From Octopus sinensis (Eukaryota), in contig NW_021837025.1 of the NCBI RefSeq assembly GCF_006345805.1, positions 62,001-126,000 of the forward strand: 64,000 bases of DNA. The letters are read 5' to 3'. Position numbers and translations under genes: made by a program. Under the pieces are notes generated by a model. It ran no database searches. It saw only the letters and a program-made list of their open reading frames with translations, and was not told where the DNA came from. Numbering within the stretch: position 1 is the stretch's first letter; each line of letters opens with the position of its first letter. Of the stretch, positions 2,683 through 58,600 are shown piece after piece.

Positions 2683-4128
2683 GTGACTCCTCTGAAATTG
2701 GCCACCTCTGAAATTGACCACACTTATAAAATTATCTTAAGAAAAATTCGAATTTCCATTGAAAGTGACCAATTCTCAAATTGACCATAAATTTTAAAAT
2801 ATATTTTATATAATTTGCAAATTAATAAAATTTCAGTTATTTTATGTCTTCGAACAATTCTCATGGTAATTTAACTTATATCAAAAAATACAGATTTTAA
2901 CTTATAAAAATCAAAATGAAGATGTTTCATGTCAGTATTTGGCTGATAGATTTTCCCATTTGTTTAAAAAGAAGATTTCCGGAAAAACAATTAATAATAT
3001 TATTTTGAAAAAAGATTTTTTTCTCAAAGAGTGTAAAAAACAAAATCTATCTTCAAAAATGCGCATAGACTCAAGTTCCCACAGCTTGATGCTATGTTAG
3101 TTGAATGGATGGATTCGATTGAGTCTAAAGGTAATTTGTACTAATTTATGATTAAGGTGGCGTTCTTAATGATGCTTTAATTTCAAATAAGGCTAATTTA
3201 TTCGCAGCTGAATCAAAACTGGATAATTTTAAAAACTCAAATGGATACCTTCATAAATTCAAAAAGAGGCATGGTTTTCAAAATTTCGATCAGCACAGAC
3301 TTGCATGTCTCCGCGCAGGCTGCTGCACAGGGAGTGGGGCCTGGCTGGATGCTCTCCCTGTCCCTTCCACCGGTAACCTATTAGACAAAGATTGCCTACG
3401 AATTGGTTTATCATTGCGTCTTGGATTGGAAATCTGCGAAATACACAAATGTCGTTGTGGTGCTGTCATTGACCGTTTTGGTCTACATCCCCTTTCCTGT
3501 CGTCGCAGTGCAGGGCGCGCACCACGCCATGCAGCACTTAACGACGTTATTCAGAGGGGGCTCACGGCCGCTGGGATTCCATCAATCCTCGAACCCGTCG
3601 GGCTTGCGAGGGGAGACGGAAAAAGACCCGACGGCCTATCGACTTTCCCGTTTGAGTTCGGCAAGTCTCTGTTATGGGATGCGACGTGTTCAGACACTTT
3701 CTCGGAGCTCAACCTTCCTTCTTCAGCTGTCGAGCCTGGCTCAGTCTCTCGCAAAACCGAGAAGATGAAGATTGGAAAGTACAAGGAGCTCTCTGAACGG
3801 TATCTGTTCACTCCCATCGCCGTCGAGACTTCCGGCGTCATCGGCGAAAAGTCTCTTTCCTTTCTAAAAAAGCTTGGCCGCATGGTCTCCCATAAACGGG
3901 GAGACCCACGCGAGTCCAAGTGGCTTTTCGAAAGGATTTCCTTGGCCATAGTACGTGGAAACTGTGTTTCCATTTACGAGGCCGGAAATTTAGTTAGTTA
4001 ATAACTATTTGTTAATTACATATAACATTCATTTAGAAAGATTGATTTTATTTCTCAAATTGGCCATTTCTCGAATTGACCACAAAAACACGTGGAACCA
4101 AAAATGGCCAATTTCAGAGGAGTCACTG
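2683..4128 (+). mobile_element. pogo/Tigger DNA transposon remnant (HTH part of transposase, DDE domain absent)
   Basis: 22-bp TIR GTGACTCCTCTGAAATTGGCCA at 2683 and its inverse at 4105-4126, ending CTG-TA. Translation ISGKTINNIILKK and FPQLDAMLVEW...FKNSNGYLHKFKKRHG matches CENP-B-type HTH domains. Confidence 0.85.
3291..4001 (+). mobile_element. 5'-truncated CRE-like non-LTR retroelement: Zn-knuckle plus restriction-like endonuclease, open frame
   Basis: SGAWLDALP...LRLGLEIC...CRCG...HPLSC...RH...EPVGL..GDGKRPDG...WDATC...KYKEL...P.AVETSG...LFERISLAIVRGN is the C-terminal signature of CRE-clade RLE elements. Confidence 0.85.
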
Positions 4129-5227: not shown

Positions 5228-6701
5228 ATGAAGTTAAGCAAATTAGGGATCGACAAATTAAATTTAGAAGGCAAGCGAGTACTAATGCGGTATATAAAAC
5301 AATATAATAGGCAGAGTAGATTTCAATGTACCAATGAAGGGGGCACATATAACTAACAATCAAAGGTTGTCGGCTATCCACAATATAGAATTGTGGCTGC
5401 CCTTCCCTCCATTAAATACGCCTTGGACAACAAGGCCACGTGCGTCGTATTGATGAGCCATTTGGGACGACCTGACGGGTTGCCCAATCTAAAATATTCA
5501 CTCAAGCCAGTCGCCACCGAACTGAGCCGACTTTTGGAAATGTCAGTCCTTTCCTTATTCCAGGGATGTCACATTTGTCCCCGACTGTCTCGGAGCTGAC
5601 GTATGCAGGACTAATAGCCCGCCAAAAGTGATACTTCTCGAGAACTTGCGATTCCACGTGGAGGAGGAGGGGAAGGGAATTTCAGAGGGCGGGAAAAAAG
5701 TGTGGATTGAATAATTCACAAGGTGACTGCCTCGGAAGAGCAAATGAAGGCCTTTGGGGACGAGTTGTCGACTTATGGAGATGTTTATGTCAATGATGCC
5801 TTCGGGACTGCCCACAGACCTCACAGGTTGCACGTGCACTCACACCGGAAGTTCGATGACAAGAATCAGGTTACCACAAAGAGCTGCCGGGTTTTTACTA
5901 AAGAATGAGCTTGATTATTTTGCGTGTGCGTTGGAGAGTCCCAAACGTCCATTTGTAGCAATTTTGGGGGGGTGGTGTTTCAGAGTGACAAATTAGAGCA
6001 AAAGTGGTGGATAAAATCCCAATAATCGACAACCTTCTGGGAATAGTGGACGATCTGATAATCGGGGGAGGGATGTGCTTCACATTTCTCCGGGAAATAA
6101 AGAAAATGGAGGTATAGTCCAGTAATCACCAGATTGGGTCCTCGATGTATGACCAAGAGGGGGCAGGGAAGGTTCACGACTTTTGGAGGAAGGCGAAGGC
6201 CAATGGGGTCACCATTCACCTCCCTGTTGACTTTGGGGTCGCCTCCGAGTTTTCAGAATTGGCGGAGAGGACAGAAAGTACAATTGAGTCAGGAATTCCC
6301 GCCAATTGTTTGGGGCTTGATATTGGTCAATCCTCCTCAGATATATTTGGTGGTGTGATTGGCAGGGCTGGGACAATCGTGTGGAATGGGTAGTCGTGGG
6401 CTGACAATTGCAGTCCTCCGGGAGTGTTCGAGTTCCCTAATTTTGAGAGAGGGACCAGGCTGATGGCGGAGGCAGTAGGGAAGGCGACAGAGGGAGGGAC
6501 AGTCTCCATAATAGGTATAGGAGGGTCAGCACAGTAGGTGGAGGAGACACAGCAACTGCTCTGGTCAATCTGGGGATAACTGCGAGAATGAGCATGGTCA
6601 GTACTGGAGGGGGTGCCGCTCTAGAACTGCTGGAGGGTGGGTTTCACTCGTACATTATAGGGAAAATACTGCCCGGAGTGAACTATTTGACAGATGCATA
6701 A
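5228..6701 (+). CDS. PGK: Phosphoglycerate kinase, 11 exons
   Basis: [27 protein letters not shown]...[10 protein letters not shown]...[12 protein letters not shown]...NDAFGTAHR...GGGDT...[14 protein letters not shown]. The frame is restored by ten GT-AG introns of 21-25 nt. Confidence 0.97.
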
Positions 6702-10298: not shown

Positions 10299-11353
10299 TT
10301 ATGTGACATGGGCAACTATGTCGTTATGGGCAGTCTGTCCTTTTACGTGTTTCTGTGGCAACCGCAGAAAAGGTATTCAATATTGAATATAGCAATTTAT
10401 ATATGGAAGAGTGCAGATTAATCAATTATTCTAATTAAAAATTGGATTTGAATTATCTTTTAAAAATGGCTTACCCAAAAGAAACACCCGAAAATAATTA
10501 TTACAATCTAAAGCTACTGATGATCGAGAAGACGTTGCCCCTCAGGATCGCAATGGATATTCTTTGGAACAACCATTGCTTCTCCCGAGGCTCTCTCTGT
10601 CTTCTCGAGATCAGATTCCCGATTTCCCCGACGAGTTCGAACGATTTTTGGCTCATGACCCCGGAGGTTTCTACGGATATTGGGGAGAAGATGAAGTTGT
10701 CCAACAGGTTGGAATATTTCTGAACTTTATGTGCCTCAGCCTTCTCAGCGGCTGAGCCTGGACTGATCGCGGAGTCAACTATATTGGTCTTTGAGAAGGT
10801 GTCTGTGCACGTGGAGTCCCACGCGAGGCATTTCCCATTACTCCACGGGAAAATGGTGACTCCATCTGGGCGTTTACCGTCTCCACGGTCAAGCCCAACG
10901 GGTTCCAGTTCTGTCGGGAATCCAGCTGCTTGTAACGCAGCCGAAATAGTCTCGTTGATAGCGGAGTGTCTGGGAGCACGGCCAGCACTCCCTCTGCATG
11001 ACAGGGGATGTAGTCCTTTGGTATCGACTTTACTACCGCATCGGCATTGGCCCCCCGAACAGACATTAAGTCCCAAGCGTATTGCTACGCCAATCCTCAC
11101 ACAGTCATTATCGAGAAGGGTATATTAAGAAAAAGTGATTTGTATCCGAGTGAGAATACAAATGGATTCTATCCGTTATTGACGTCTATAGTCTGTTTTA
11201 TGATTATAATTATCATAGTTTTGCTTTTTCGAGGCCATTAATTAACGAGTCAGGACTCGAGGTTTCAAAAAATCTCGAGTCCCTATTTTATCTAAATGAT
11301 CCCTGTGAGATTTTAAGGTTGCCCATAGGGGCCTGATTACCCATGTCACATAA
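10299..11353. mobile_element. Non-autonomous TIR element, copy B (contains a CRE-like insert)
   Basis: Perfect 14-bp inverted ends: TTATGTGACATGGG (10299) and CCCATGTCACATAA (11340-11353). Confidence 0.7.
10501..11122 (-). mobile_element. 5'-truncated CRE-like RLE retroelement tail, copy 2, open frame
   Basis: LLDNDCVRIGVAIRLG...CRCG...HPLSC...EPVGLDRGDGKRPDG...WDSTC...KY...LFQRISIAILRGN is homologous to 3291-4001. Confidence 0.85.
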
Positions 11354-11424: not shown

Positions 11425-12333
11425 TTATGGTTTTTCCCTGAAATCACATTTGTCAGTAGTTTTGACATTTGAAAAGAGAGTGTAAAGTCCGAAAAACCCG
11501 CATTTGTACACGTGTATACTGACATTATTGTCTGCTAGAGCACGTCCTTCACGTGTGTTGAGAATGTAGAGAGTTTGTTCGTCTGTAGCGATTAAATTGA
11601 GGTCCAGGAGTTTATAAAATAATTTTTTGTACGTTTCGCAGAACTGGAACAAGACTTTGGCATGACCAGCGAACATGGCACCCCCAACCCACTCTAGGGC
11701 GTCTTTGGTGATTATATCCATGGATCTTTCATGAAAATCTCTTACCTGGGAGAAGAAAATGCTGTTATTGTCAATGTATTTGGAAGTTGTAAAACTATAG
11801 TCCATTTGAGGTTTGGTATTACGCAATAACCCCATGTCTGTCCATGCAAAATACGAGGACGTATTTGAAAACATTCGAATGGCTCTTTCTACCAGTTCGT
11901 GTTTGGAATTCACGATTGCCGAATACTCGAAATTACCCGTTTGGAGTGGGTGCTTTCCATAACCCGGAAGAGTGAATATTTCCTGTATTTTCTGAATATT
12001 TTTAAATCCAATCAACTCCCAACGAGAAAGATAAATGACAGTGGTTTGTTTTCCTTTTCGGACCTTTAACAGTTGGTCGAGAAAAGATTTGCTATCCGAG
12101 AAAAACACAATGTGATTTTTCACAAACCCGTATTTATAAATCCACTCATAGTACTGGGAAGGCTTCCGAATTCCGCCTGGCTTCAAAAATTCCCCAAGAT
12201 TGTAGTAGCCAGAAACTATTACAAAATCTTCATTGTTTACTGTTTCCGGCTTTTTTGGGCATACAAGATAATATAGTATGATGAGGAAAACAGACATGAT
12301 TAACAGGACTTTATATTTCTTGTAAAAAAACAT
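11425..12333 (-). CDS. HtrL/YibB-like protein with N-terminal membrane anchor; intronless
   Basis: 302-aa ORF. The motifs IVSGYY, YYEW, IVFFSD, YSAIVNSKHELVERAI, YFAWTDMG, WVGGAMFAG and ATDEQTLY match my recollection of the HtrL/YibB family. Hydrophobic stretch at residues 9-25. Confidence 0.65.
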   Translation of the reverse strand: MFFYKKYKVLLIMSVFLIILYYLVCPKKPETVNNEDFVIVSGYYNLGEFLKPGGIRKPSQYYEWIYKYGFVKNHIVFFSDSKSFLDQLLKVRKGKQTTVIYLSRWELIGFKNIQKIQEIFTLPGYGKHPLQTGNFEYSAIVNSKHELVERAIRMFSNTSSYFAWTDMGLLRNTKPQMDYSFTTSKYIDNNSIFFSQVRDFHERSMDIITKDALEWVGGAMFAGHAKVLFQFCETYKKLFYKLLDLNLIATDEQTLYILNTREGRALADNNVSIHVYKCGFFGLYTLFSNVKTTDKCDFREKP

Positions 12334-12479
12334 TGTTAAATGCGATTGAAACTGGTGAATATTTATGAAAATTCGGTCAACTATTATTACAGAAATAAAA
12401 TTATAATTTGAAAATTAGATTTACCATTTCGTTACAAAAAAATGATTATAAATACTTATTAAGAAAGAACTAAAAAAAA

Positions 12480-13620
12480 GAAAAACTTGAAAATGTCTTT
12501 CGGGTAAGAAATCTTCTATTCTGCCAAGAACCAGTCTTTCCAGGATTTTTGACATTGAACATAAGAGGGAAATCGGCCTGAAAGATGCCGGGTCCCCTCT
12601 TGGTCTTCCAGGCTTCAGTATCGGCCGTATTAGGGCCTGTTTCCATATTGACGGAATCACGTTGTTGTTGATTGAATAGTTGAAAATGGATGTTAGGAAC
12701 CTGACTCCTTCGACACCAAGGTTTTTTAATAGAATGATCGGGATTTTGTCCGGGCCGTGAGAATACGAAGATTTTGTGGGGTGCAAGGTATCTTCCACCT
12801 CCTTTACCGAAAGGAGGAGCGGTTCAGCCCGTTTTTTTAGGCTTCTGTTGGAGGGGAGTGAGTCGGATTTCCTGTGCTCTTTGTGTGCATTTTTCGCATA
12901 GAAATTCATGAGGCTGTTCACGTCTTTTTTATCAAAATCTTCAAAAGGTTCGGGAGCGTCCCCCCTGGCCACGTGCCGAATGGCTTTCCACACTTCACCC
13001 GTTGAACGATTACGGTTCATGGTAGAAAGAATGCGATTCCATTTCAAATAGGTGTGCCTGTGTTCACTGGTCTTCAATTCCTTGTTTAAATATTGGATGC
13101 GGGTAATTATGTCAGAAGACATTCGGTTTGACTTTTTGAGGCGATTTCTCGCCTTGGCCAGACCGGATATCCTTCGACTACAAGCAGCGTGAGGTGGACG
13201 TTTAGGAATAGCCATTGCTCTTGCTTCCAGAATGATCTTCGAGAAGAAGCCAATGGCCTTGTCGAGAGAGCTAAAGTTGTACAGATTGCAATTTTTTAGT
13301 CTCGTGTTCAATATCTCTTCGAACCGTGGCCAGTTGGCCGCTTTGTAATAGTATGGAATTGGAACTTTCCTGGTGACAACTTCTCTTTTGATCTTCACCG
13401 TTATCGGGTTGTGATCGCTTCTCGTTTCATAGAAGACTGACCACTCCGTAGATGATGCAAGAGAAGGAGAGCATAAAGTTACATCGGGTGATTGTCGGTC
13501 CCTCTGAATGGGGTTCTTGTGTTTCTCGATGGGTTGTTCAGGATAGTTAAGGAATCCAATTGGGAAAGTAGAGATTTCCCTCTCGTATCCGCCAACTGAT
13601 TAGAGAGCTAAAGGGGGTGT
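12480..13620 (-). mobile_element. APE-type LINE fragment (end of endonuclease, linker, first RT motifs)
   Basis: RSDHNPITV, AANWPRF, SHGPDKIP, WKQALIRPILKPG, SFRPISLLCSMSKILERL. Confidence 0.9.
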
Positions 13621-15681: not shown

Positions 15682-18018
15682 ATGGATTTTAGTGTTGTAC
15701 ATATTTAGCTTAATCTTTCCAGTCTGACCCACTGCTCAACTATCACTCCGAGAGGTACCAGAAATTCACCGAATTGCTCAACAAACACAACAAATCCCTC
15801 CAAAAAAATACACCAAGTCCCATATCTGTCACCACTTCCGACGGCACAGTCGTCCCCGGCACGTCCTGGAGTACGACTCCCCTCTCAATTGCCAACCAGT
15901 ATTCGGCCTCATTCTATCCCAGGGACTTGCAAGACCAATACATTGTGGCCAGAGTCAATGGGGAGTTGTGGGACCTCGAACGTCCCCTGGAAGCCGACTC
16001 CTTCGTTGAATTCCTCACTTTCGATGACCCCGATGGGAAAATGGTGTTCTGGCATTCCGCAGCCCACGTGTTCGGCCACGCCGCGGAAATATTATACCCC
16101 GGGACTCTCCTCTGTGTGGGTCCTCCTACAGAAAAGAACTTTTTCTACGATTTTTTCATTCCCGATGAAAAGTATGCCAAATAATCATTTTAGAACAAAT
16201 GGGGAGACTTTCTCTAAAAGGACGTTCGACGAGTCCGCAATTCGGGAGATCAAGTCAATAATTAACCAAATTTCTCAACGGGCCTTCCCGTTCGAGCGAA
16301 TGGTGGCCGACAGAGAAGAAATAAAGGAATTATTCAAGGTTTGGCCCTTTTAAGCTTCAATTTGCAGTACAACCAGTTTAAATTGGAGATAATCAGTGAT
16401 AAACCTGAAGAGAACACATTTTCCGTGTATCGTTGTGGAGGATTGGTGGATTTATGCAGAGGTCCCCACGTGAGGGACACGGGAAGGATAATCCACTGCA
16501 TGATTACTAATGTGACGGGCTTGTTAATGGTAGTGTTCTTCTACCTTCTGGAAAGGCCTGTCCTCCAACCCAAGTCTCCAAAGACTCTACGGAATTGCCT
16601 TTCCTACGGAGGAAGGCCTGTCCAATTACATCGAAGCCCAGGAACGAGCTGTAAAATACGATCATAGGAATATTGGAAAGGTTTTTGGAGTATTTTATCC
16701 GTCAGCAACAAGAATTGTTTTTTTTCCACCAACTGACCCCTGGGTCGGCCTTCTTCCTGCCGAAAGGGGGGATTATATATACTCGGTTAGTCAAATTCAT
16801 GCAGGGGGAGTACGCGAAGAGGGGATTCCGGGAAGTAGTGTCCCCGAATGTGTACAGCAGTAAGTTGTGGGAGACGTCCGGTCATTGGCAGCACTATTCG
16901 GTGGTGTGGATTGTCACATTGATAGGATAATATGTTTAAATTCACTTGTGATGACACTCAGTTCGGTCTCAAGCCAATGAACTGTCCTGGCCACTGGTAT
17001 TGGAGTGTGTCTTATGTGTAGTCTCATGTTTAATTTCAGAACTCGTTCTTACCGAGAACTGCCTTTGAGATTGGCTGAGTTTGGAGTTTTGCACAGAAAC
17101 GAGATTTCGGGGGCACTTTCTGGGCTGACGAGAGTGAGGAGATTCCAACAAGACGACGCCCACATTTTCTGCGAGTATTCCCAACTGGAGAGTGAGATCT
17201 CTGCTTGTCTCGAGTTCGCCATGTTCGTTTACAGCAAACTGGGATTCAAAAAATTCGAGTTGTTTCTCTCCACTCGCCCTGATGACTATTTGGGGGATCT
17301 GCACGTGTGGGAGGACGCCGAAGCAGTAATCGTATTTTGTTAGGTCATAGCAACTCACGAGGGCTCTTAATAGGTCAGGGTTTGACTTCAAGGTCAATCC
17401 GAAGGACGGAGCCTTCTACGGTCCCAAGATTGATATTTGCATGTTCGACGTGATGGGGCGATCTCATCAATGTGGGACAATTCAGTTGGACTTTAATTTG
17501 CCCAGTCGGTTCAACCTTCTCTACACATCGTTGGTGTGTTGTGGTTATTTCCAGAGACCAACAAACGGAGAAAAGACCAGTGATGATCCACAGAGCAATT
17601 CTCGGTTCACTTGAGAGGATGATTGCTATTTTGTGTGAGAACTGTTTGGGGAAATGGTTTGAGTGTTCATTCCATGTTCAGGCCGTTCTGGTTATCCCCA
17701 TTCCAGTGCATTGTCATGAGTGTCGCCTCCGTGGCCAATGACTATGCTTATGAAGTGACTGACATATTGGAAAGGAATGGATATTGCTGTGACGTGGATG
17801 ACGACAGCACTACTACTTTGTCTAAGAAAATTAAAAATGCGTATCCTAAATATAATTTTATTCTTGGTACTATCAACTGATGTATTGTAGTTGTGGGGGC
17901 TAAGGAGGTCGAGAAGAGAATGGTTAGTCTTCGAGCACGTGATGTAGATGAAGCTAACAAAAATCAGGAGTTGCTTACGATCGCGGATCTCCTTGATAAG
18001 TTTAGTCAACTATTGTGA
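15682..18018 (+). CDS. TARS: Threonyl-tRNA synthetase, cytosolic type, multi-exon
   Basis: TGS domain ([15 protein letters not shown]), [70 protein letters not shown]. Confidence 0.97.
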
Positions 18019-27499: not shown

Positions 27500-29123
27500 C
27501 TACACTAAATCTCCGAAACAATCAAACGACCCGTCATCATCTTGGAATAAATTGTCATTGAAGGAGGCTTTCTTTACAAGGGAGTCATCCTGCGACTCTT
27601 CTTTGACTGAACCAAGTGTGGGTTGATCGTCGGGTCGGGACATTCCAACTCGGTGAATCGTTTTGGTGTCGCCGGCCATACGGTCCATGACATACAGCTT
27701 TGGCTCGGACACCAACAACACATTCGGCGCAGAAGGGGAATGTGTGGGCAGGGATTTGAGAGACTCATTGCCTGGTGGAGTGACCCCCGGCTTCCGAGGC
27801 TTCCTCTTCTGTGTCCGCGAGGCAGTGCTTGGCGCTAAAAGAATAAAACCATAAGAGAACTGTTTATTTTGCGGACAGCCCTCTTGGTCTTCTTATTGTA
27901 GGTGTCGAAGGAATCTAAAATGAGGACAAAGATGTACCCGACTGGGCGGAAGTGGGTCTGCCAATAGAACTGGTGGACTCGACACTGTTGAGTTGCTGAG
28001 ACATATCCCTGTCCATTTGCGCCCTCTGAATCTGCATTATTATGGCTCGGAGGGAGTCGGAGGGGGTCATTCCAAAGTTGCGGGAGTGTCCCATCAGTCC
28101 CCGGGCTGCCTCCCCAATGGTGATCATCTTAATGAGTGAGGACAGAAAGGACACCTCGAGAAAGTGGAGGATGGCCGGGGTGATTCCATTATCCGTTATA
28201 TTATTGAACAACACGTGTTGATGTTGTTCACTCTTGGAGTACATGCGGAGGGATTCCTTGTCGACCATTTCCCGGAAGTTGTGATGTTCGATCGACCAAG
28301 ACCTGATTCGGTGGCAGGTCAGTCCGAACTCCACCTCGACAGTCCCGTTGACGAGGACCTTCCGTCATGTCCACAACCAACCTCGTAGGTCACGTTGAAC
28401 ATTCTGTACTCCGTACGGACAGAGGCGTTGGGGTAAAGCAGGCAAAATGACTTTTGTCGAGGACAGCAGTGGACTGGCTGTCGAAGGATGTTGTGGACTT
28501 GAACGACTCCATTCTCATAACAGAACCGGTAGAACCTGCCAATCATGGCCCTCCCCACGTCTACACACGTCACTGACCTCACTACAGAAACTCTTCGTGA
28601 CCCCCCCGAAGATGCCGGTTATTCGAATATTCGCGTCATCCTCGAAGAATTCATCCGCGAATTTTTCCCAGAAGGAGTAGACACAGCGCTGGGGTGAGTG
28701 GGGGATGTACCTCATCACATCGGGCTTCGCTGGTGATGTCGTACAGGTGGTTGAGCTAGGAATCAGTCAGGACTGTACTTCTAGTCGCGGAGTACTCGAC
28801 TTGGCCATGTTCAGCCATCTGTTCATCTCGTAGACACGTGACTCCACCACTGACACGATTTGGTAGGCTGACACTCCCGGCCGCCGAGTGATTGGGGGTC
28901 CCCTCGGCATGTGTTGTTGGCTCAGCACTTGTTGTTCGTAGCTCATCACTCGCTGGCAGTCAAGAGGGCGGACAACCTGACTGCGGGGGTACAGCATGCC
29001 ACAGTTCTGCGGGTGGTCATCCATTGGGTGTCGGCGCACTGGGGGCATAGCACTGCGAGGGGTAGACTGGTCCATGTACATTTCCTCTGTTAAGGCAATT
29101 AGGCATTTGGGGGAGGGGGACAA
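27500..29123 (-). CDS. LDB: LIM-domain-binding protein (Chip/LDB); start approximate
   Basis: RVYEMNRWL, FWEKFADEFFEDDANI, IGRFYR, RIRSWSIEHHNFREMV, and the LID-like VLLVSEPKL..TIHRV. Confidence 0.8.
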
Positions 29124-29671
29124 TAGGGGATATGCACTGTGTTAGGTCATTAAAGCGAGCATTGCATGTCAGTACTTTACCCAACTATGAAAAGAAAACC
29201 ATATAAATACAATTTTGTTCATTTATAATTAAAACAAATACTAATTCATTTTTACTCCATTTTTTAATCATTTTAACACGCTCTGCTTTTTACCAGTAAT
29301 CGATTAGCCAAAAGTGATCTCTTACCTTCCGGTCTTAGCGTGGCGTTATGGGGTCCACCATGTCAGTTGGAAAATTCCAATCGGATATGGCAACGCTCAG
29401 GAGGCACTTAATGCCTACCGAAAAAGGACTTCTAGCTCTCAGACCCTGGGACATGGTCGTCTCAGGCCGATCATGCGGGCAGGATCGAACCTTTCAGAAG
29501 GATCTCCCTCGTTTGGATCGGCGATCACGGGAATAACTATAATTAACTGGCTTTGCCCGTGTTTGGTCTTTAATAAATAATAATAAATCGATGACTACTC
29601 CTATTGATGACCACGTTAAATAATTCTGTCACCCGCAGTCATAAACCTCCCCCAATCTGTCACCCGCAGTT

Positions 29672-31727
29672 CTACAAAGAACAGTCCAATACGAGAAAAG
29701 CGTAAAAATCAAGAAATAAGCAGCAAATTAAGTGTGGACGAGGGATCGAATCTCGGTAAGCCTGGAATTGTACAAATTGGTCAATTCGTTCTTCTCGTGG
29801 AGGGACAGTCTGTACATCTTCATAGTCCTCTCCTCGTGCTACAAATGACTGTCCATTCACATACTGCCAACACAAGTCCAATCTCATCCTCCAACATCAG
29901 CACGTGTGCTCTCAGTCGCTGAGTCTCAAAGTCCTTGACGCAAAGGGCCACTTTGAGGTCGTGGATTAACTTGCTGTCGAATATGGACCCCTCGCTGGTC
30001 TCGTCCCGCTCGATTTCCTGCAGGGACTTGGAGACCATCCGGGCAATCCGCTCATTGTCTGCCCGGAGACGGTCTTCCGTGGACTTGTAGTTCTCAATGG
30101 CCACCATCAACTCCTCGTGGAACTCGGAAAGAGTGCCCGAAACCATCGAAAGTTGTGACTTTAGGGAAGCAATGTTTATTTCCCGTGCTTTGATGACCGT
30201 CAGCAGAGTATTGACTGCATTCGTGTCAGACTCCTTGATGGACAGTTCGTCTATTTGAGGGAATTGCCTGGAATATGACCCTCAACTACCCCTCGAGCAC
30301 CTCCGCGGACTCGTCATCGGAAATGGGACTCATTTTGTGTGCCCGTTCTCTCAACATTTCGTACATCTCCGTCCTCTGCTCCAACAATTTCTTCCCCTCC
30401 AAGTACGACCGCTTTATCTGGTCATTCTCCTCACTCAACTTGTCATACTGCTCCAACACGTCCTCCAGTCTCTTGCTCAACTCGGATCTGGAATGTGGCA
30501 CACTCTCACCTCTCGTTCTCCAGGTAATTAATCTTCTCCACCGAACTCTCCCTCTCGGCACAGTACAGACTGCAGTGTGCCTCAAAGTCCGCCTGCACTT
30601 GACTCAACTGCGACTGAAGTCCCCAAATCTGTGCGTGGAGGGAGTCGATGGCCTGCTGTTCGCTGTCCCGCTGGGGAGGGGGACTGTCCCTCTTCCCCAC
30701 GGCCACACTGCCCTCCTTGGGGATCTCCGGACTGCGGGGACGTGGCTCAGTGGTCATGATGGAGTCGAGCATGCTGCACCAACTGTCCCTCGACGACTCG
30801 GTGGTGACGGACAAGGTGAGTGTCTCCCCCTCAGTCTTGACAGTCAAACCAGTCCTCAACCTCCAAGACGAAGCCGTAGCTGAAGGGGAGAGTCAGTTCC
30901 TCCACTTTTTTGCACTTTTTGACATCAATGAGCATGTTCACTGCAGAACAGCCATCCATTTTGACAGATAACTGGCCGTTCTTCAACTTGCACCAACACT
31001 TGGCCCATTCCTGGTACATGAACACGACTTACATTCGTCTGCTTGTCGTTGAGCATGAGCCACCCACTCTTCTGGTAGAACAGTCCCTGTGGAGTGAGCA
31101 CACCACTTACTTCCAATTCTGCACTCTCTCCGTACAAATGACTCCTCTTCTCACTCGGTTGGGGCACTGTCTTGACTGCCGTGAGAGGAGGGGAGTACCC
31201 GACTGGGTGGAGTCGACCAGTTTGCCCTCACTTTCGGTGGAGGAATGGAAGACTCGTCTGGGCTGAGTGTCCTGTCTTCTGAGGACACACCGACTGGCCT
31301 CGCCCATCGAACTGTGGAGAATATCCCCCCACCTGTGAATGACCAACCACCCTACCTCCTGATCTCATCTCGATTGACTCCCTTAATGAACATGTCTTGT
31401 CCTTCGAAGTGCAGTCTGAGGGAGTTGGCGTGGGTGGTGATCTCCTCCGCCTCCGACAGTTCCAGCAGGTCGTTCAAGTCCATGTCCGACAAAGGCACTC
31501 CTTCCACCTGCCATCAGTCACGTGCTTACGTTTTCGTCCAGGAAATATTTGAGGTGGGCGTCGCTGTAGACCACGAAGTATCGCCTGATCCACCGCTGGG
31601 AGTGACCTCACACACTCACCCTCGACTTGGACAGGGCTGTGGAGAAATTCGAGTCCTGTGATATGAAGAGATACCCGCAGTGAGTCGCCTTGGTCGAGCA
31701 CTACTTTGTTTTCATATTTTTACGCAT
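29672..31727 (-). CDS. Two-PH-domain plus coiled-coil protein, MPRIP/TRIOBP/outspread-like; ends approximate
   Basis: QKSGWLML..WAKCWCKL..IDVKKCKKVEE..YGF..LSVTTESSRDSW (PH), an upstream PH-like segment DMFIKGVNRDEI, and long C-terminal coiled coils. Confidence 0.55.
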
Positions 31728-31904
31728 TTTCTTTCCAAGGCTTCAGCCGTGTGCTGGTTTTTTGCAGCAAAACAGTTTTGGCAGCGAATACGGCTGAACC
31801 GATTGGGCTCGAACTTTGTGCACTGCTTGTACGACATGCTATTTCACAACCAACAATAACAATCTATAATATTTATTTATTTAATAAACTATTTGAAATA
31901 TATT

Positions 31905-33076
31905 ATGTCGAAGTGCTCTTCTCGGATGTCGTGGCCCACTGTGGGGTCCTCGGTCATTTGCTATGCAGAAAATATTTCCCGGCACAAACTGTTCTTTGAA
32001 GGGACGATCACCGAACAGTCCAGTTGTGGAAATTACAAAGTCCACTTTTACGGCAAAAATAAGCGGTATCAACACACTAATCAGACAGACATGCCGTGCT
32101 TGTGTCCAGACAGTGCATTCTCCCCAACGTCCACAAATACCAGAACATGCGACTCGACTTGCTGTCCAACTCCCGCGTGTAATCCACTTGTCCTACTTTA
32201 TAAGTAAAAATGCGTCCACTCGGAATAATTATGTCCTCCACGTCCTGCAGGAGGTCGTGGGAAGGGATCACTTTATTTACAAACGTGCAAAGGCCTACTT
32301 TATGGACTCCAAAAGGGATCCCTTCCCTCAGGAGGTCCCCCTCGACCTCTCCGAGTATGGAAGGGTACAGTCACTGTCTGAAAGTCAAAGGAATTGGTGG
32401 CCTTGGTGCCCCCTGCCCTGGTCGACCATGTCAGGAATTCGTTCGTGCAGAGACACTCGCGGAGGGGGCGGGAGGCCTGTCGGAGGCCCAACGTGATCAA
32501 CCTGTTGGAGGACTTTTTCGTGGGGAGTTGTGCTGAACTGATTCTGGGGAACCACGACGAGGAGAGTGGCCGAGGGAGGTACTTTTAAATACCAATTAGA
32601 ATTCGATTGAACATTGAGTTTGTTGTGGGAGTTCGGGACATGTTCGACTATTATGCCTCCTATTTGATAGACTACACTCCCTGGGAACGGCTGGGGGGTG
32701 CTTTTGTGGTCGGGGACTTGTTTGGAAGGGTTGGGGGACTTGTGGATCCCCGATGTGAGAATAAAATGAGAGATCGACTTCGATGTAGCCAGTCCACTCA
32801 AAACAAAATATCTGGACTGATGAACGAGTTGAGGGGGTTTGAGTTGTGCAGTCAGGACTACCTGCAGGGGTCAGCCCCCTCTCTCTTTTCGGGAGTGGAC
32901 CATTTGAGTCGCCTGTTCTGTATTCCTGGTGATTGACCGCAGGTTTATTTCCCCGTCTTGTCGACAGGCCTTTGGAGGAGTGTCGGTTTGGCTTGGTCTG
33001 CCAGTATTATCAGCAGTTCTCTCAGTTTGCTCTATTGGCCTATTTTAGATTTCTCCTTAACTGCTTGAGTGTCTGA
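31905..33076 (+). CDS. Chromo-barrel plus MRG-domain protein, MSL3/MRG15-like
   Basis: VICYAEN..LFFEGTI..YKVHFYG (chromo barrel); PNVINLLEDF, FVVGVRDMFDY, PSLFSGVDHLSRLF (MRG). Micro-introns of 20-26 nt restore the frame. Confidence 0.8.
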
Positions 33077-33248
33077 TTTGCCGTCTTTTTCAATAATTTT
33101 GATTTTTGAAAATTAGAATTTTTAGTAGTGATTTGATCGAGCCAATGTGCCCTAAGTAGAGGGCAGAGACCTTCAAAATTAATTTGTTGATAAAAAATGA
33201 CAGAGAATTGAAATAGTAACTGAATGAATGAGTATAACCTAATTTGTT

Positions 33249-35336
33249 GTGGTTCATACAACAATGCTGAATTTTGATTTTCAGAAAGACTCGGATAAAA
33301 GAATATTGGAATCAATGGACTTGCACATCCGGCCAGTCATAGAGCAGGCCAATATAACTCGAACTAACCTGCTCACTGTCCTCAAAATGAGCATAAACGA
33401 CGTCATTTCACAACACGTCCTCTCCAAATGTCAGATGGACATGGCACACCCCAAGACACTCAGACTTGTCAACGTGATCGAAAACTTTTTTTGTTTTGGA
33501 CTGAAGAACATGAGGAACCTGATGACAGTCATTCTGGAAGTGTGCAGGGAGGACGGACGGGAGGTGGTCAATGCCATCCAAAACATGTCGTCTCTTCGGT
33601 TAGCCACTCAGTTGACAGTCCGCAGAACAGTCCCCTCCACTTTCAGAGCGTGGGTGGCCATGTTGCTCATGCGGAAACAATTTTCATATTTTTATGGATT
33701 GGTGAGGTGTCGGACACTCAAGTATGCTTGCATGCTCAGCCCAGTGGGGACATGTACGAGGACTACTCGTGTCTGGCCTGCGAGGAAGGGGAGGTGGCCA
33801 CCGGGCTGTTTCTGTGCTTGTCGAGCATTGACTTTACATTTGTGGCCACCGACGTGGACCTGAACTACCAAGTACGTGTCCCACTCATGTCAGCCCAGTC
33901 CAGTCGACTACGCCTATTTCATGGGCAGAGTGCAGTCCGATTCCCCCATCGACGACTCGCCTGCCAAAATAACGAGCATTTTCAGCCAGAAGGCGTACTT
34001 GGAAGAACGAGTGTCCCTCTTGGAGTAACCACTACTGTCTAACTAAGATGGAAGGCACAGGAAATGAAAAGACAGATCCAACAGGACTCCATTCTGTTGG
34101 ACGAGACAGCAAGGAAGGAGCAAATGGTCAGGGATCAGGCTCAGGCCAACGAGAAAGACCTCATCGAGTACAGGTCACAACAACAAATCATCATCGAGGC
34201 ATTCAACGACAAAATTTCAGTTCTAATTTGATAATCTCAGTCCAAGTCGGAAATCAGGGAGAAGAATCAACAAATCTACAATTTGCAACAAAAATGCGGC
34301 GAATATCTCGACCAACTGGCGACTGTCCGAGTTGTCCAAACTGTAAGCACTCCACCGGACTGTAGGACTTGGAAAACGTGTATAAACAAGCACAAAGCGA
34401 AAGTAAAAGGCAAAGTGAGCAGATTGTCGCACAAATAAGCCAACTGACAGATCTTACGACTCAGCTGAACCAGGCTAGGCACGCCAATCAAGTCTTGGAG
34501 TCGGATCTGGCTCATCGGAGAGAACAAATACAAGTTTGGGTAATCACGTGACCAGTCCTGTGAGGAACTATTGGAGTTGCGGACCACTCAAATCACCAAT
34601 CTGGAAGGAAAACTCTCCAAAATGTCGCTTTTGGTGAAGGACCACGAGATTTTGTTGGTTGAGTGTTACATTGAAGAATAAAGCGAATAAAGGAGGAGAA
34701 CTCTGCAATGGCTGACAAGTGCGAGAGAGTGGAGAGCAAACTGGCATTGGAAGTGGAGGCAAAGTATTTGGTCCTGTCCAAATAGACAAACCATGGAATC
34801 CCTCTGCACGCAGGAGAAACTCAAATGTTTTGATTTCCAGCAGCAGCTTGAGTTGTGCGAATCGAATGCTGCGAGTCTTAAGCGAGAACTGGGTCGTCTT
34901 GTTCCATATGAGCAGGTTAAAGAATTTGTAATTTGAATATTCTCATTTTATTTTAATTGTGAGATTAACCTATTATTTTGTTTAGGAATTTCGGTCATTA
35001 AAGAAGAAATATGACAGCCTGGTGTGCAACTATAAAGAACAGGAGGAGGCGTTGGTGGCGATGGGATGCCAACTTCAAAGCCACAATCTCAAGTTGGACG
35101 AGTTGCACGAGAATACAAAGTGGATTGTGGACAGCGATCAGTCCAATTGCAGCATCTGCGAGTGCAGCTTTACAGTGTCCAAAAGACGGGTTTGAGGGTT
35201 GTTGGACTAATGGTAGCACCACTGCCGTCGTTGTGGACTTATATTTTGTAATGAGTGTTCCGACCACCGAGTCACCCTCCCGTCCTTTGCCAAACCAGTT
35301 CGAATATGTGACACCTGCTTTCATAATATCACATAA
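33249..35336 (+). CDS. RUFY: RUN and FYVE domain protein; start approximate
   Basis: [41 protein letters not shown] (RUN), coiled coil, and W...CSIC..F...[13 protein letters not shown]...VRICDTC (FYVE). Confidence 0.88.
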
Positions 35337-38843: not shown

Positions 38844-40185
38844 CTATTTACGTGTTTTGAAGTCCTTTTGTGTAGAACAAGTAATGCAAACAAGCTCTCT
38901 CCCTACTCTGCAGTGCACCAACAGATAACAGTGGGAAAACTTTCTCTTCAAATAATTAATTAGTCGAGGCCTACAAAATGTATCGAAAAACTTGAAATCA
39001 CAAAGTGTAAAAATATTTGAACAATTTTTTGCTATCCGCTGAAGGATCGTAGACAAATTGATGTTCAGTGACAGCAACAAATCCCTCCTCAAGCGTGGGG
39101 TACTCAAACCCGGCATAGAACTCATCAAACTCCTCTTTGGACGTCAAATCAATTCCCCCATCACTCGAAAAGTGTCTCACTGCATTCAAATGCTGAGCCA
39201 ATTCGAGAGTGACAGCCAAAACAAGACATGCGGGCTCTGCTAGTGTTATGACAGTAAATACGTTCCACAAGACTATTTATCACATCCCTCCGACCTCGCT
39301 TGGTTCCCGGACACCCATCCACCACAATTTGTATATCCGAGTCTCCAACATTCAACAGACAGTCCAGTGTAAGGACTGTTCCCGCCATTTCTGCCCCCAT
39401 TCGAGTGGCTAACCAAGTCTTGCCAGAACAGGGCGGCCCACAGACAAACACAATCCTCTACTCATTGTGGCACTAGAAGAGACCGATTGGGGTTGATATT
39501 TCCAGTCGAGAGCACCTTCCAAGTCGGGGATATGTGTCAACCATCGGTAAGGCTGAGGTGCTTCACTAAGAAAAAATTCCTCAGGAGTTTTGAAAGCTTA
39601 AAATAAGACAGAAATCCGACCACAGCCAACATTGTAGGCAAATTGTCGGTCACTGCAGGCAAAATCATCTTTTCTTCCTGCGGCATCCCCCACGAAAATA
39701 CTCCCAACTCGGTCGACGTGGTGACCTCCGTGGAATAGACGTTCGTACAGTTCCCACAGACGTATTGACGGTTTGCGGTAGAGGACTCCACTCACCGGGG
39801 AGAGAACTGTCCACGATTCCAAAAATCGCAAAAAATTTTTTGTTCTTTTCTGAAAGAGGAAAAAGTGTTTGGGAGACCGACCGGCGAGTTTTTGATTGCT
39901 GAACATGACTATTTCGTATCCTTCAAGCCGCAGCCTGGAAAGAGTGTCCGGAATACAGGGAAACAGCCATTCCCAGTCCAGAGAGTCTTTCGGATATTTT
40001 TTCATTCCTTTTGGTCGTACAAGACACCAGTCGATATCAAATGCGGCCACTTTTACGCTTTGTGGGCACTTTTTGTAGTCTGAATTTGTGTTGGTCGTGT
40101 AGATTACTACTTCTTGTTGTCCACGAGGGTTGACATGCTGGAATGTGCTCCATTCGACACTCCTCAGTGACACACGCTCGCTCAT
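38844..40185 (-). CDS. PNKP: Polynucleotide kinase 3'-phosphatase; 3' end approximate
   Basis: KVAAFDIDWCL, MFSNQ, YRKPS, FVGDAAGR..DFACSDRQFAYNVG (phosphatase); GPPCSGKT (kinase P-loop). Confidence 0.9.
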
Positions 40186-48242: not shown

Positions 48243-48268
48243 TTCGAATAAATCCGTTTTGTAGTACA

Positions 48269-55697: not shown

Positions 55698-58600
55698 TTA
55701 AATTGATGTAAAGCGTATTAAAAGTTCTGGGGATCTGTATATCATGATGAGTGTGGCAAACAAATACTCCTCCAACTCAAACTCCCCAAAGTCTCGAGCA
55801 TTGGAAATATCAACGCACAATTGTAACAGTCTATCGACATTGGGCAACTCCTGGAACATGATCCGACTGGAGGCTCCCGTGATGTACGTGCGCATAAAAC
55901 GGGAGATTACAATGACAACATATGCATATAACCCAAGGATCCTACAATTATCCCTCCAGTTATACCCATAGTTCGTGAATATTGAATAACTTTAGAAGAA
56001 ATACGCGACGTGAACGTGTTCAGATGCATGACGGAGGACTGGTCTTCCATCCGGACTTGCCACCACTCATCCTCCATCGACTCCGCCATGTAATGATCGA
56101 GGGTGACGTCATTCCACAGAGGACCTGTTCTGACCATCCATGGCGGCGGTCCGCAGTTGTTATTGTCATCAATCACAATGTAGGGAGGGATCAGTTTGGG
56201 AATTGTTCTGCAATATAAGTAACAAGCATACAGAGAAAAGTTGTAACTACCACTCAGGTGGTCTATTAAAAAGTGTCGTTCAGTCGTAGTGAGTTGTTTC
56301 CTGAAGGTGCATCGAGCAATGGAATATCGATTCTTGAGCACATTTCTAGAATAAGACAAATAGGAAAAACCGTTCGATTAATATTTCCACTTCGAACGAG
56401 AGGGGAATGTCCGACTGCAAGTCATGAATCATCGACCTCCGTCCATTAGGATTGATGGTCCAGAAGCAAGTCCTGTTGGTCATGAATATCAATGTGGAAA
56501 TGTCTTCTGGAGAGTACTGCTGAAGGAAGGCTCCGTGCCCGTTTTGAGTCATTTCATGATTCAGTTTAGAGAAGGCGGTCTTAGAAATGGACAGAATCTG
56601 ATCGTCGGAGACTTGAATCCAAGGTTGGAAGTTGGATAGCTTAAACTCCAAGCGTGCCTTGTCGGGAGGGGCGGGATCGTATATATTGGCAGAGAAGAGG
56701 AGCAGAGGGAACCAGACAACGACAATAATAAAGATGATGAGGAGTCCACCAGTAAAGAACTTGTAGAGATTTCCCAGGACTTGTCCAGAAAGTTGGACGA
56801 ACCTCTGAAAATGACAGGAAAACTGACCTTCTCTTGAGTGCGATAACACTTGATTACAAAAGCTTCCTGATTGATATTCTGTATCTGAATCCACGAATAC
56901 AGTGCCAAGGACGTTTTAGTGAGTGCCCAGTCCATGGTGAGGATGATCTCGTGGAGGAAGGGGACCAACATGTACCTACCCATCACTCAGAGGACTACAG
57001 TTTGTACAACACCAAGGACAGATAGTTGTGATGTTTCGTAAACCATATCTTGAGCACTCTCCGCGGGTAGTTTGCTCGAATTTGCAAAGCCGAGATGTAG
57101 AAATATGCGCATTTGAGGACATACCACGCCATCGCCGGCATGTTTTCCGTGATCGGACTGCCAATGAGGGGAGGACTGACGTTTGGGTGGTTATTGGAAG
57201 AGCCACGAAAATCCACACATGGACAGCAAGAACGAGGACGACGTAGAAGATCATTTTGTGGAGAATTGACTTGTTGACGTATATCACTCTGTCCACCACA
57301 ATCAACAGGAATTCGACAATGAGGAGTCCCAGAAACGACATTGGCACTCTGTTCGAGAGAATGTACTGCTGTACTGCCGTGTGGTTCTCGGAGACACTGA
57401 ATCCCCAATAACCAAATATCGACACGGCGAACGTCAGGAAGTCAAAAAAGAACATTTGAGTGTACACATCGCGAGTATCGGGGACTGCCGAGTTGGCAAT
57501 GTGTGTGTACACCGATTGCAAAAGCCTACACATCAGTCCTCCCAATACCTGCTGCTCCAACTGGTCTGCGCTGCCAACGGGGATGGCAAATCTTCCGGAT
57601 TCTCGCCAATGTCCCTCTCAGATGACACATCTGCCGGGCTCTCGCCGTTCTCGGGGGACGTGTCCGGAGCTGAGGACCAGAGACCAGTGTGCTGGAATTA
57701 GACAAAGACCAACTTGGAGTCCCAGTTTGTGGAAGAGAAGTGCAAATATCAACACAAAGTCGAATGCAACAAACCCATGCAGAGTGTCATGATTGAGAGA
57801 AATTGACTGGCAATAAATCCACTCGGGATCCACAAGACCGGCCAGCAGAAAGTATTTGAGCACAAACTTGAACCCGACGAGTGCCTGCCCAATGACCGAG
57901 ATGATTACAGTGCTGATGAACATGGCCATCTGCCAGAACCGGACAGTGGGACGAGGCGACTTGAGTAGTCCGTAGAGAAGAAGGAGGAGTGTCAGAGGCA
58001 GAGAAAAGGGGAGAGGGTTGATTAGTTGGTTTATCACTATCAGAAGAAAGCACAGACCTTGTGTCTGAGCAAACAGCACACGAATAACCAACATCAAAGT
58101 CATCGACACCAAAGCTCGACTCCTACAAAACTTGTTGCATAAACCAACTCAAAAAAACTCTCATCCTGACCAATACTCTCTCCACTGTCAGACTGTGCTT
58201 GGTAGTCAGGACAGTATTTGGTAAACTTGACATTACTGAGAATAATACTCTCTCTTGTTTCTCCCTGTAGACTTGGTCGTCAAAGGAGCATGGGAGGAGT
58301 ACGCAATTGGAATATTCCATGCAGAACACTCGCACTTTCCATATCCACTTGTCCATGAATTTCTAATTAATCAATGTCGGCAAACCTTCCCCCACTTTTC
58401 TCTCACAGGACAATCATCGGTTGAGGATCCCCCGAGTCTCCTGGAAATCAGAAACTCGACAAATTCGACGTTCCATGATCTCACGGCTACTCGAATTATT
58501 CGGGAGGCGGACCGTCGTAGTGACTCATCCTCTCCCCGTCGGATGGTTTGTGGACATTCTCCCGGATGTTTTGTATGTTTTCCTTTATTTCAAGAAATGC

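What the first reader, a model, noticed from the sequence alone, without database searches (positions are those of the whole stretch)
5228..6701. Ten introns of 21-25 nt in PGK, nearly all at ancestral animal positions
Seen in sequence: introns at 5290-5314, 5366-5388, 5542-5563, 5700-5722, 5827-5851, 5972-5996, 6112-6132, 6390-6413, 6515-6537 and 6637-6660. From my recollection of human PGK1, nine match in position and phase (MR|V, QR|I, K|D, K|V, S|S, GG|A, E|I, IG|G, EG|K). The same size class occurs throughout the window, down to 20 nt (GTACAGTCACTGTCTGAAAG in the MSL3-like gene). These introns were miniaturised rather than lost, to far below the size usually considered feasible for animal spliceosomes. 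Similar sizes are reported for dicyemids, ciliates and nucleomorphs.
Basis: partly seen in the sequence, partly recalled or inferred. Interest (0 to 1): 0.7.

Follow-up and report, generated by a model that had tools for sequence, protein, structure and literature searches.

The report
Ultra-short introns in a dicyemid PGK gene
The ten 21-25-base introns in this phosphoglycerate kinase gene are real and sit at ancient animal intron positions, but the DNA is almost certainly from a dicyemid parasite carried as contamination in the Octopus sinensis genome assembly, and dicyemids have been known for such tiny introns since 2007.

Summary
Removing the ten GT..AG segments (21-25 nt) from 5228-6701 gives a 412-aa, full-length PGK. 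It is 60-63% identical to animal PGKs. An independent homology-guided spliced alignment recovers the same ten boundaries.

All ten coincide in alignment column and phase with introns of the hemichordate Saccoglossus. Nine match a vertebrate PGK1 (gar) and nine match a sponge. ThrRS (10-11 introns, mode 25 nt) and Piezo (4-5 introns, 23-25 nt) in the same window show the same size class, again at ancestral positions. ThrRS has nonetheless lost about 8-9 of 19 ancestral introns.

The window is bases 62001-126000 of contig VCDQ01003981.1 in the Octopus sinensis assembly GCA_006345805.1. Its genes are only 53-60% identical to cephalopod orthologues. O. sinensis hosts Dicyema japonicum, and dicyemids are one of only two animal groups known to have introns under 30 nt. 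The most likely source is therefore a dicyemid contig contaminating the octopus assembly; this is inferred, not shown by sequence identity.

The phenomenon is published (Aruga 2007, Ogino 2010, Lu 2019, Zverkov 2019, Hadjez 2026). What may be new is the unflagged contamination and a slightly shorter intron mode. Transcript evidence was not available.

The parts
5228..6701 (+). Phosphoglycerate kinase gene: 11 exons, 10 introns, 412-aa product
   Evidence: Splicing and translation; Pfam PGK 1.7e-132 over the full profile; gap-free alignment to human PGK1 structures; guided spliced alignment
5290..5314 (+). Intron 1, 25 nt, phase 2 (MR|V)
   Evidence: Same column and phase as gar, Saccoglossus and sponge introns
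5366..5388 (+). Intron 2, 23 nt, phase 2
   Evidence: Shared with gar, Saccoglossus and sponge
5542..5563 (+). Intron 3, 22 nt, phase 2
   Evidence: Shared with gar, Saccoglossus and sponge
5700..5722 (+). Intron 4, 23 nt, phase 0
   Evidence: Shared with gar, Saccoglossus and sponge
5827..5851 (+). Intron 5, 25 nt, phase 2
   Evidence: Shared with gar and Saccoglossus, absent from the sponge
5972..5996 (+). Intron 6, 25 nt, phase 2
   Evidence: Shared with gar, Saccoglossus and sponge
6112..6132 (+). Intron 7, 21 nt, phase 0; carries an in-frame TAG if retained
   Evidence: Shared with gar, Saccoglossus and sponge
6390..6413 (+). Intron 8, 24 nt, phase 2; the one intron not found in vertebrate PGK1
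   Evidence: Shared with Saccoglossus and sponge, absent from gar
6515..6537 (+). Intron 9, 23 nt, phase 1
   Evidence: Shared with gar, Saccoglossus and sponge
6637..6660 (+). Intron 10, 24 nt, phase 1; retention would be in frame, so it is supported by homology (ELLEG|K) and position only
15720..18015 (+). Threonyl-tRNA synthetase gene (N-terminus not modelled). Introns at 16172-16220 (49 nt), 16339-16367 (29), 16512-16533 (22), 16681-16705, 16901-16925, 16997-17021, 17326-17350, 17530-17554, 17657-17681 (25 each) and 17867-17890 (24). Probable eleventh intron at 15899-15922 (24 nt)
   Evidence: Guided spliced alignments with three guide proteins. All ten coincide with introns shared by Haliotis and Oscarella. 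The eleventh lies within one alignment column of a shared phase-2 intron
55707..57611 (-). C-terminal part of a very divergent Piezo gene. Introns at 57158-57180, 56976-56998, 56805-56827 (23 nt each) and 56346-56370 (25 nt). Doubtful 20-nt intron at 55990-56009
   Evidence: Spliced alignment with the single guide P0242, 33% identical

Best explanation
These are ordinary GT-AG spliceosomal introns that have shrunk to a narrow length class. In 24 introns from three genes, the mode is 25 nt and the median 24.5 nt. They have kept the positions and phases they had in the ancestral animal PGK gene.

The DNA is most likely from a dicyemid, a roughly 30-cell parasite of cephalopod renal sacs. It appears to have been co-sequenced with its host and left as an unplaced 373-kb contig in the Octopus sinensis reference assembly.

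Inferred mechanism: intron-definition splicing with a reduced signal set. The elements seen are:
- an exonic (A)G before GT, with only a weak A at +3;
- a T-rich interior;
- an enriched A about 8 nt before the 3' end, a candidate branch point only about 13-15 nt from the 5' splice site;
- a pyrimidine at -3 (YAG);
- a tight length window that may itself act as a ruler.

Shown: boundaries, frame restoration, positional homology, the size class in three genes, and the contig's identity. Inferred: that transcripts are actually spliced, the dicyemid origin, the branch point and the ruler.
For: Introns are real:
- Exact boundaries and a 412-aa full-length PGK.
- The same ten introns from an independent guided alignment.
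- 10/10 positions and phases shared with Saccoglossus, 9/10 with gar, 9/10 with a sponge.
- Retention of introns 1-9 truncates the protein.
- The same class in ThrRS, at positions shared by a mollusc and a sponge, and in Piezo.

Signals, comparing 23 true introns with 98 exonic GT..AG look-alikes:
- T content 37.5% against 23.7% (p = 1e-5).
- Pyrimidine at -3 in 91% against 38%.
- A at -8 in 57% against 32%.
- Exon -1 is G in 16 of 23 true introns.

Source:
- A window ORF is an exact NCBI protein on VCDQ01003981.1 of GCA_006345805.1.
- 20.6 kb of that record is identical to the window, which places the window at 62001-126000.
- That assembly is O. sinensis.
- O. sinensis is the host from which D. 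japonicum was collected.
- Octopus vulgaris ThrRS is only 53% identical and Argonauta PGK only 60% identical to the window proteins.
- Dicyema introns are 26.2 +/- 1.9 nt at conserved positions, or median 27 nt.
- The D. japonicum genome is 36.7% GC, 49% repeats and LINE-rich. The window is about 41% GC and carries reverse-transcriptase-like ORFs.
- In a survey of 51 animal genomes, only dicyemids and myxobolid myxozoans had introns under 30 nt.
Against: - No transcript or cDNA evidence could be obtained. No spliced PGK more than 63% identical exists in the protein collection.
- No Dicyema sequence was available for direct comparison, so the taxon rests on host association, intron size class and exclusion of alternatives.
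- The window's introns average about 24 nt for the 23 introns of 21-29 nt. This is about 2 nt shorter than published dicyemid values, so the species may not be D. japonicum or D. acuticephalum.
- GT..AG look-alikes of the right length are not depleted in exons: 98 observed against 93.8 +/- 7.9 in synonymous shuffles. The listed signals may therefore not be sufficient for recognition.
- The A at -8 rests on 24 introns and many positions were examined.
Confidence: 0.8

Rival explanations
1. The contig comes from another, undescribed octopus-associated animal that is not a dicyemid and that evolved ultra-short introns independently.
For: There was no direct sequence match to Dicyema. The intron mode of 25 nt (median 24.5) is shorter than published dicyemid values of 26-27 nt. 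Piezo is extremely divergent: one hit, 33% identity.
Against: Dicyemids are the common renal-sac parasites of benthic octopuses, and O. sinensis is the documented host of D. japonicum. A 51-genome survey found introns under 30 nt only in dicyemids and myxobolids. GC and LINE content fit D. japonicum.
Confidence: 0.07
2. The contig comes from a myxobolid myxozoan, the other animal group with 22-27-nt introns.
For: The median intron length in Thelohanellus and Myxobolus is 22 nt and in Henneguya 27 nt, which brackets the value seen here.
Against: The contig sits in an octopus assembly, whereas myxobolids cycle between fish and annelids. No cnidarian or myxozoan protein is among the best 120 hits for PGK or ThrRS. 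The top named hits are molluscs, a brachiopod and hemichordates. PGK at 62-63% and ThrRS at 55-58% identity to bilaterians is high for the fast-evolving Myxozoa; that last point is my inference.
Confidence: 0.03
3. The DNA is truly part of the octopus genome: either native octopus genes or dicyemid DNA integrated into a host chromosome.
For: It is deposited and annotated as Octopus sinensis, with proteins in NCBI and UniRef.
Against: The genes are only 53-60% identical to cephalopod orthologues. Three genes spread from 5 kb to 62 kb of the window all have about 24-nt introns. More than ten genes lie within 64 kb. From general knowledge, not tested here, both features are unlike octopus genes, which have kilobase introns and low gene density. 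The genes look intact, not decayed.
Confidence: 0.03
4. The segments are not introns but assembly errors, programmed frameshifts or translated insertions.
For: Intron 10 of PGK and the probable first ThrRS intron are multiples of three without stop codons and could in principle be translated.
Against: All ten start with GT, end with AG and lie at ancestral intron positions and phases. Nine would truncate the protein if retained. Long-read indel errors do not produce 21-25-nt insertions with splice dinucleotides.
Confidence: 0.01

Closest known systems
Dicyemid ultra-short introns (Dicyema acuticephalum, Aruga 2007, PMC2222250; D. japonicum, Ogino 2010 Gene 449:70 and Lu 2019, PMC6736024; Dicyema sp., Zverkov 2019, PMC6543705)
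   Same: GT-AG introns in a very narrow size class under 30 nt. Positions are conserved with other animals. There are several introns per gene. The host is O. sinensis. The genome is moderately AT-rich and LINE-rich.
   Different: The mode here is 25 nt and the median 24.5 nt, against a mean of 26.2 and medians of 26-27 nt in the published species. Sequence identity to a named Dicyema species was not tested. The DNA is filed under the host's name.
Myxobolid myxozoan introns (Hadjez et al. 2026, PMC13644364)
   Same: Animal introns with medians of 22-27 nt. The 5' signal is reduced to GTa. [quoted passage not shown] Positions are conserved.
   Different: Those are cnidarian parasites of fish and annelids. 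No cnidarian affinity appears in the window's PGK or ThrRS hits, and the DNA was found in an octopus assembly.
Ciliate and nucleomorph mini-introns (Paramecium about 25 nt, Stentor 15-16 nt, Bigelowiella nucleomorph 18-21 nt; cited; nucleomorph sizes from general knowledge)
   Same: The same physical scale and a narrow length distribution, which suggests length-dependent recognition by a canonical spliceosome.
   Different: Those are not animals. The window's genes are animal-type, with animal intron positions and standard stop-codon use.
Orthonectid Intoshia linei short introns
   Same: A reduced parasitic 'mesozoan' with shortened introns and similar intron density.
   Different: The median is 57 nt and most introns exceed 30 nt.

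Membership tests
U2-type GT-AG spliceosomal introns | GT at the 5' end and AG at the 3' end | tested here: met
   10/10 in PGK; 24/24 in the pooled set
U2-type GT-AG spliceosomal introns | Removal restores a continuous reading frame that encodes the conserved protein | tested here: met
   412-aa PGK, full Pfam profile, no gaps at junctions
U2-type GT-AG spliceosomal introns | Positional and phase homology with introns of orthologous genes | tested here: met
   10/10 with Saccoglossus, 9/10 with gar, 9/10 with sponge; ThrRS 10/10 with Haliotis and Oscarella
U2-type GT-AG spliceosomal introns | Absent from mature mRNA | not testable with these tools
   No transcript data for this organism. No spliced PGK more than 63% identical in the protein collection
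U2-type GT-AG spliceosomal introns | Branch-point adenosine and pyrimidine tract upstream of the 3' splice site | tested here: inconclusive
   A at -8 in 57% of true introns against 32% of decoys; T-rich interior; pyrimidine at -3 in 91%. Only 23-24 introns, and no long tract is possible in 21-25 nt
Dicyemida (source organism) | Dominant intron class under 30 nt, narrow, at conserved positions | tested here: met
   Median 24.5 nt, 22 of 24 introns between 21 and 25 nt; published dicyemid values
Dicyemida (source organism) | Association with a cephalopod host | tested here: met
   The window is VCDQ01003981.1:62001-126000 of the O. sinensis assembly. O. sinensis hosts D. japonicum
Dicyemida (source organism) | Sequence identity to a known dicyemid genome or transcriptome | not testable with these tools
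   No dicyemid nucleotide or protein data could be reached. The cluster of the exact ORF has a single member
Dicyemida (source organism) | Spiralian phylogenetic affinity | tested here: inconclusive
   The top named hits are molluscs, a brachiopod and hemichordates, but identities are flat (53-63%) across bilaterians and sponges. No tree was built and no cnidarian sequences were available
Myxobolidae (alternative source) | Cnidarian or myxozoan sequence affinity, and a fish or annelid host | tested here: not met
   No cnidarian or myxozoan among the best 120 hits for two genes. The contig comes from an octopus assembly

The most novel reading that the evidence does not exclude
The contig belongs to a dicyemid species, or a related octopus parasite, that has not yet been sequenced. 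Its introns would be measurably shorter (mode 25 nt, some 21-22 nt) than in any published dicyemid. The long-read Octopus sinensis assembly would then hold large, unrecognised pieces of its genome. This 373-kb contig exceeds the 196-kb contig N50 of the published D. japonicum assembly. If so, a better dicyemid genome could be recovered from existing host data, and a set of 'octopus' proteins in public databases would be mislabelled.
Probability: 0.35. Interest if true: 0.45.

Novelty: already known. Interest (0 to 1): 0.27.

Why it matters
Animal introns of 21-25 nt challenge the textbook minimum for the metazoan spliceosome, and how they are recognised is still unknown. That question is already posed in the literature for dicyemids and myxobolids, so this PGK gene is a clean worked example, not a discovery.

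The practical point is different. A gene-dense contig of at least 64 kb, and probably the whole 373 kb, in the Octopus sinensis reference assembly appears to be parasite DNA. At least some of its ORFs are in NCBI and UniRef as octopus proteins. This can mislead comparative genomics, claims of horizontal gene transfer and gene-family counts in cephalopods. The same contigs are also a free source of long-read dicyemid sequence.

Tried and rejected
- **Codon-usage gene finder.** I tried a dynamic-programming gene finder based on codon usage that allowed 17-60-nt introns across the whole window. Codon bias is too weak: it mis-modelled even PGK, so I abandoned it for homology-guided spliced alignment.
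- **RNA genes.** Rfam at gathering thresholds and a tRNA scan of the window found no snRNA, rRNA or tRNA. There is no RNA marker for taxonomy and no spliceosomal RNA to inspect.
- **Exact look-ups.** Of eight window ORFs, only one is in the protein collection, and its own names are masked.
- **Haliotis rufescens PGK.** It turned out to be an intronless copy and was useless for position mapping.
- **Lingula ThrRS.** The isoform was not on record; I replaced it with Haliotis cracherodii and Oscarella.
- **MSL3-like 20-nt intron.** Pfam found no MRG domain in the joined translation or in neighbouring ORFs. By eye there are MRG-like motifs in 32589-32933, but the intron lies in an unconserved linker and cannot be verified by homology.
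- **Piezo search.** It returned only one guide at 33% identity, so only the C-terminal third was modelled.
- **Selection against cryptic sites.** I tested whether exons avoid cryptic GT..AG sites of intron length. They do not.
- **Missing sources.** The supplement of the 2026 MBE paper and the O. sinensis genome paper were not held.

Full report
**1. The observation**

The region 5228-6701 (+) was read directly. Their lengths are 25, 23, 22, 23, 25, 25, 21, 24, 23 and 24 nt.

Splicing them out gives a 1239-nt ORF from ATG 5228 to TAA 6699-6701, encoding 412 aa. The protein covers the whole Pfam PGK profile (positions 1-379, E 1.7e-132). It aligns with human PGK1 crystal-structure sequences over residues 4-410, with no gap at any junction.

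As an independent check I wrote a protein-to-genome spliced aligner. It uses BLOSUM62 and allows GT..AG introns of 15-120 nt in all three phases. Guided only by the Saccoglossus PGK protein, it recovered exactly the same ten introns.

Unspliced, the frame stops at codon 43. Retaining any single one of introns 1-9 creates a premature stop. Intron 10 (24 nt) would give an in-frame 8-aa insertion inside the invariant ELLEGK motif, so it is supported by homology and position only.

**2. Is it more than chance?**

GT..AG pairs 21-25 nt apart are common. There are 34 in the PGK span, and 98 in 5.7 kb of coding sequence from five window genes. The dinucleotides alone prove nothing.

The evidence is that each of the ten frame or homology breaks is bounded by GT..AG and coincides with an ancestral intron position and phase. 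From the observed GT and AG frequencies, I estimate about 0.017 per site by chance, so about 1e-18 for ten sites. This is my rough estimate.

**3. Intron positions**

I fetched the genomic loci of three animal PGK genes and mapped their exons exactly. I then placed all introns on a protein alignment.

| Reference | Window introns matched (column and phase) |
|---|---|
| Saccoglossus kowalevskii (11 introns) | 10 of 10 |
| Gar PGK1 (10 introns) | 9 of 10 |
| Sponge Corticium candelabrum | 9 of 10 |

- The gar's cumulative exon lengths (65, 116, 272, ... 1213) equal those I recall for human PGK1.
- The intron missing in vertebrates (6390-6413, phase 2 in WNG|PPG) is present in both the hemichordate and the sponge. 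It is therefore ancestral and was lost in vertebrates.
- The window lacks only the phase-0 intron at alignment column 312, which gar and Saccoglossus have.

**4. The size class elsewhere in the window**

ThrRS (about 15720-18015, +) was modelled with three guide proteins. It has ten confident introns: 49, 29, 22, 25, 25, 25, 25, 25, 25 and 24 nt. All ten coincide with introns shared by the mollusc Haliotis cracherodii and the sponge Oscarella lobularis.

A probable eleventh intron (15899-15922, 24 nt) lies within one alignment column of another shared phase-2 intron. Haliotis has 19 introns, so in ThrRS about 8-9 ancestral introns were lost and 10-11 were miniaturised.

The C-terminal third of a very divergent Piezo gene (57611-55707, -) has introns of 23, 23, 23 and 25 nt, plus a doubtful one of 20 nt.

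Pooled over 24 introns, the median is 24.5 nt and the mode 25 nt. Twenty-two lie between 21 and 25 nt, and only four are multiples of three.

**5. Splice signals**

I compared 23 true introns with the 98 exonic GT..AG look-alikes.

| Feature | True introns | Exonic look-alikes |
|---|---|---|
| T content of interior | 37.5% | 23.7% (p = 1e-5) |
| Pyrimidine at -3 | 91% | 38% |
| A at -8 | 57% | 32% |
| A at +3 | 35% | 17% |

The last exon base before the intron is G in 16 of 23 true introns. This agrees with the reduced 'GTa ... [quoted passage not shown]

Exons are not depleted of look-alikes relative to synonymous-codon shuffles: 98 observed against 93.8 +/- 7.9. How the true sites are chosen remains unexplained. 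The 2026 MBE paper leaves the same question open.

**6. Where the window comes from**

- One window ORF (39601-40185, -, 195 aa, PNK3P domain) is an exact NCBI/UniRef protein.
- It lies on contig VCDQ01003981.1 (372,945 bp) of assembly GCA_006345805.1.
- The 20.6 kb fetched from that record is identical to window 29598-50185. This places the window at record positions 62001-126000 and PGK at 67228-68701.
- GCA_006345805.1 is the Octopus sinensis reference assembly of Li et al. 2020.
- The genes are not octopus genes. Octopus vulgaris ThrRS is 53% identical and Argonauta hians PGK 60% identical to the window proteins, no closer than insects or sponges.
- Three genes spread from 5 kb to 62 kb of the window share the mini-intron architecture, and more than ten genes lie within 64 kb.

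**7. Which organism**

O. sinensis is the host from which Dicyema japonicum was collected for its genome project.

Dicyemid introns have been reported several times:
- 26.2 +/- 1.9 nt (n = 16), at conserved positions, in 2007;
- 'highly shortened ... in conservative exon/intron structure' in 2010 (Ogino et al., cited);
- median 27 nt in Dicyema sp..

The D. japonicum genome is 36.7% GC, 49% repeats and rich in LINE elements. The window is about 41% GC and contains reverse-transcriptase-like and related repeated ORFs.

A 2026 survey of 51 animal genomes found introns under 30 nt only in dicyemids and myxobolid myxozoans. Myxobolids are disfavoured for two reasons. No cnidarian or myxozoan protein appears among the best 120 hits for either PGK or ThrRS, where the top named hits are molluscs, a brachiopod and hemichordates. 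Their hosts are also fish and annelids.

I therefore conclude, by inference, that the contig is dicyemid DNA carried as contamination in the octopus assembly. No dicyemid sequence was reachable for a direct comparison. The intron mean here (about 24 nt for the 21-29-nt class) is about 2 nt below published dicyemid values. The species may therefore differ from those studied.

**8. Mechanism (inferred)**

I propose canonical U2-type splicing by intron definition with minimal signals: exonic (A)G|GT, a T-rich body, a candidate branch A about 8 nt from the 3' end, and YAG.

This would place the branch point only about 13-15 nt from the 5' splice site. The distance is comparable to ciliate and nucleomorph mini-introns and far below what vertebrate spliceosomes accept. 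The very narrow length distribution suggests that length itself is part of recognition. None of this was tested. The window contains no snRNA genes.

**9. Comparison and novelty**

The finding matches the published dicyemid pattern in every tested respect. It is a further example, not a new kind.

Two things have not been reported in any paper I could find:
- an unplaced contig of the O. sinensis reference assembly is parasite DNA, with ORFs deposited as octopus proteins;
- this organism's intron mode is slightly shorter than in published dicyemids.

**10. Verdict**

The phenomenon is already known for dicyemids. Interest is low to moderate, mainly for the contamination and as a clean example.

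The decisive missing tests are alignment to dicyemid assemblies and transcriptomes, and RNA-seq junction evidence.

Noticed in passing
window 1-64000 (= VCDQ01003981.1:62001-126000 of GCA_006345805.1): The window is part of an unplaced 373-kb contig of the Octopus sinensis reference assembly, but it carries non-octopus genes. At least one ORF (39601-40185, -, PNK3P domain) is an exact NCBI/UniRef protein entry. Neighbouring gene models on the record (a 301-aa CPEB-like protein and a 351-aa unknown) come from the same stretch. This is probably parasite contamination annotated as host.
   Followed up: partly
window 5228-6701 and coding sequences of five window genes: GT..AG look-alikes of intron length are as frequent in exons as in synonymous shuffles (98 against 93.8 +/- 7.9). 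There are 34 in the PGK span, of which only 10 are real introns. The visible signals may not be enough to specify splicing.
   Followed up: partly
window 16172-16220 (+): One ThrRS intron is 49 nt, about twice the class size, yet it sits at an ancestral position shared with Haliotis and Oscarella. It is an outlier in an otherwise 21-29-nt set.
   Followed up: no
window 11425-12333 (-): A single-exon 302-aa ORF matches Pfam HtrL_YibB (E 2.9e-08), a family described as bacterial. It lies between repeat-like ORFs in this animal contig. It could be a horizontally acquired or transposon-borne gene.
   Followed up: no
window 3414-4001 (+), 10501-11100 (-), 12421-13398 (-): Two ORFs of about 195-199 aa look by eye about 60% alike (CRCG...GLHPLSCR..AGRAPRH...GDGKRPDG motif) and have no Pfam match where tested. 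A 325-aa ORF looks like part of a non-LTR retrotransposon protein. These are repeated mobile-element remnants, in keeping with the LINE-rich dicyemid genome.
   Followed up: no
window 55700-62400 (-): The Piezo gene is extremely divergent. The word-indexed search returned a single homologue at 33% identity, although the C-terminal pore motifs are recognisable. Only the last third was modelled.
   Followed up: partly
window 48050-50000 (-): A DEAD-box helicase (DEAD and Helicase_C hits) has motifs that by eye resemble DDX20/Gemin3, a factor in snRNP assembly. It has several mini-introns that were not modelled.
   Followed up: no
window 28000-34000: A GC-rich block (48-52% GC) has long open frames in several frames on both strands. 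Pfam found nothing at E <= 1 apart from a weak RUN hit at 33243-33860.
   Followed up: partly
L003 (Haliotis rufescens, GCA_023055435.1): The best-scoring mollusc PGK (P0004) is encoded by an intronless copy, so it is probably a retrogene.
   Followed up: no
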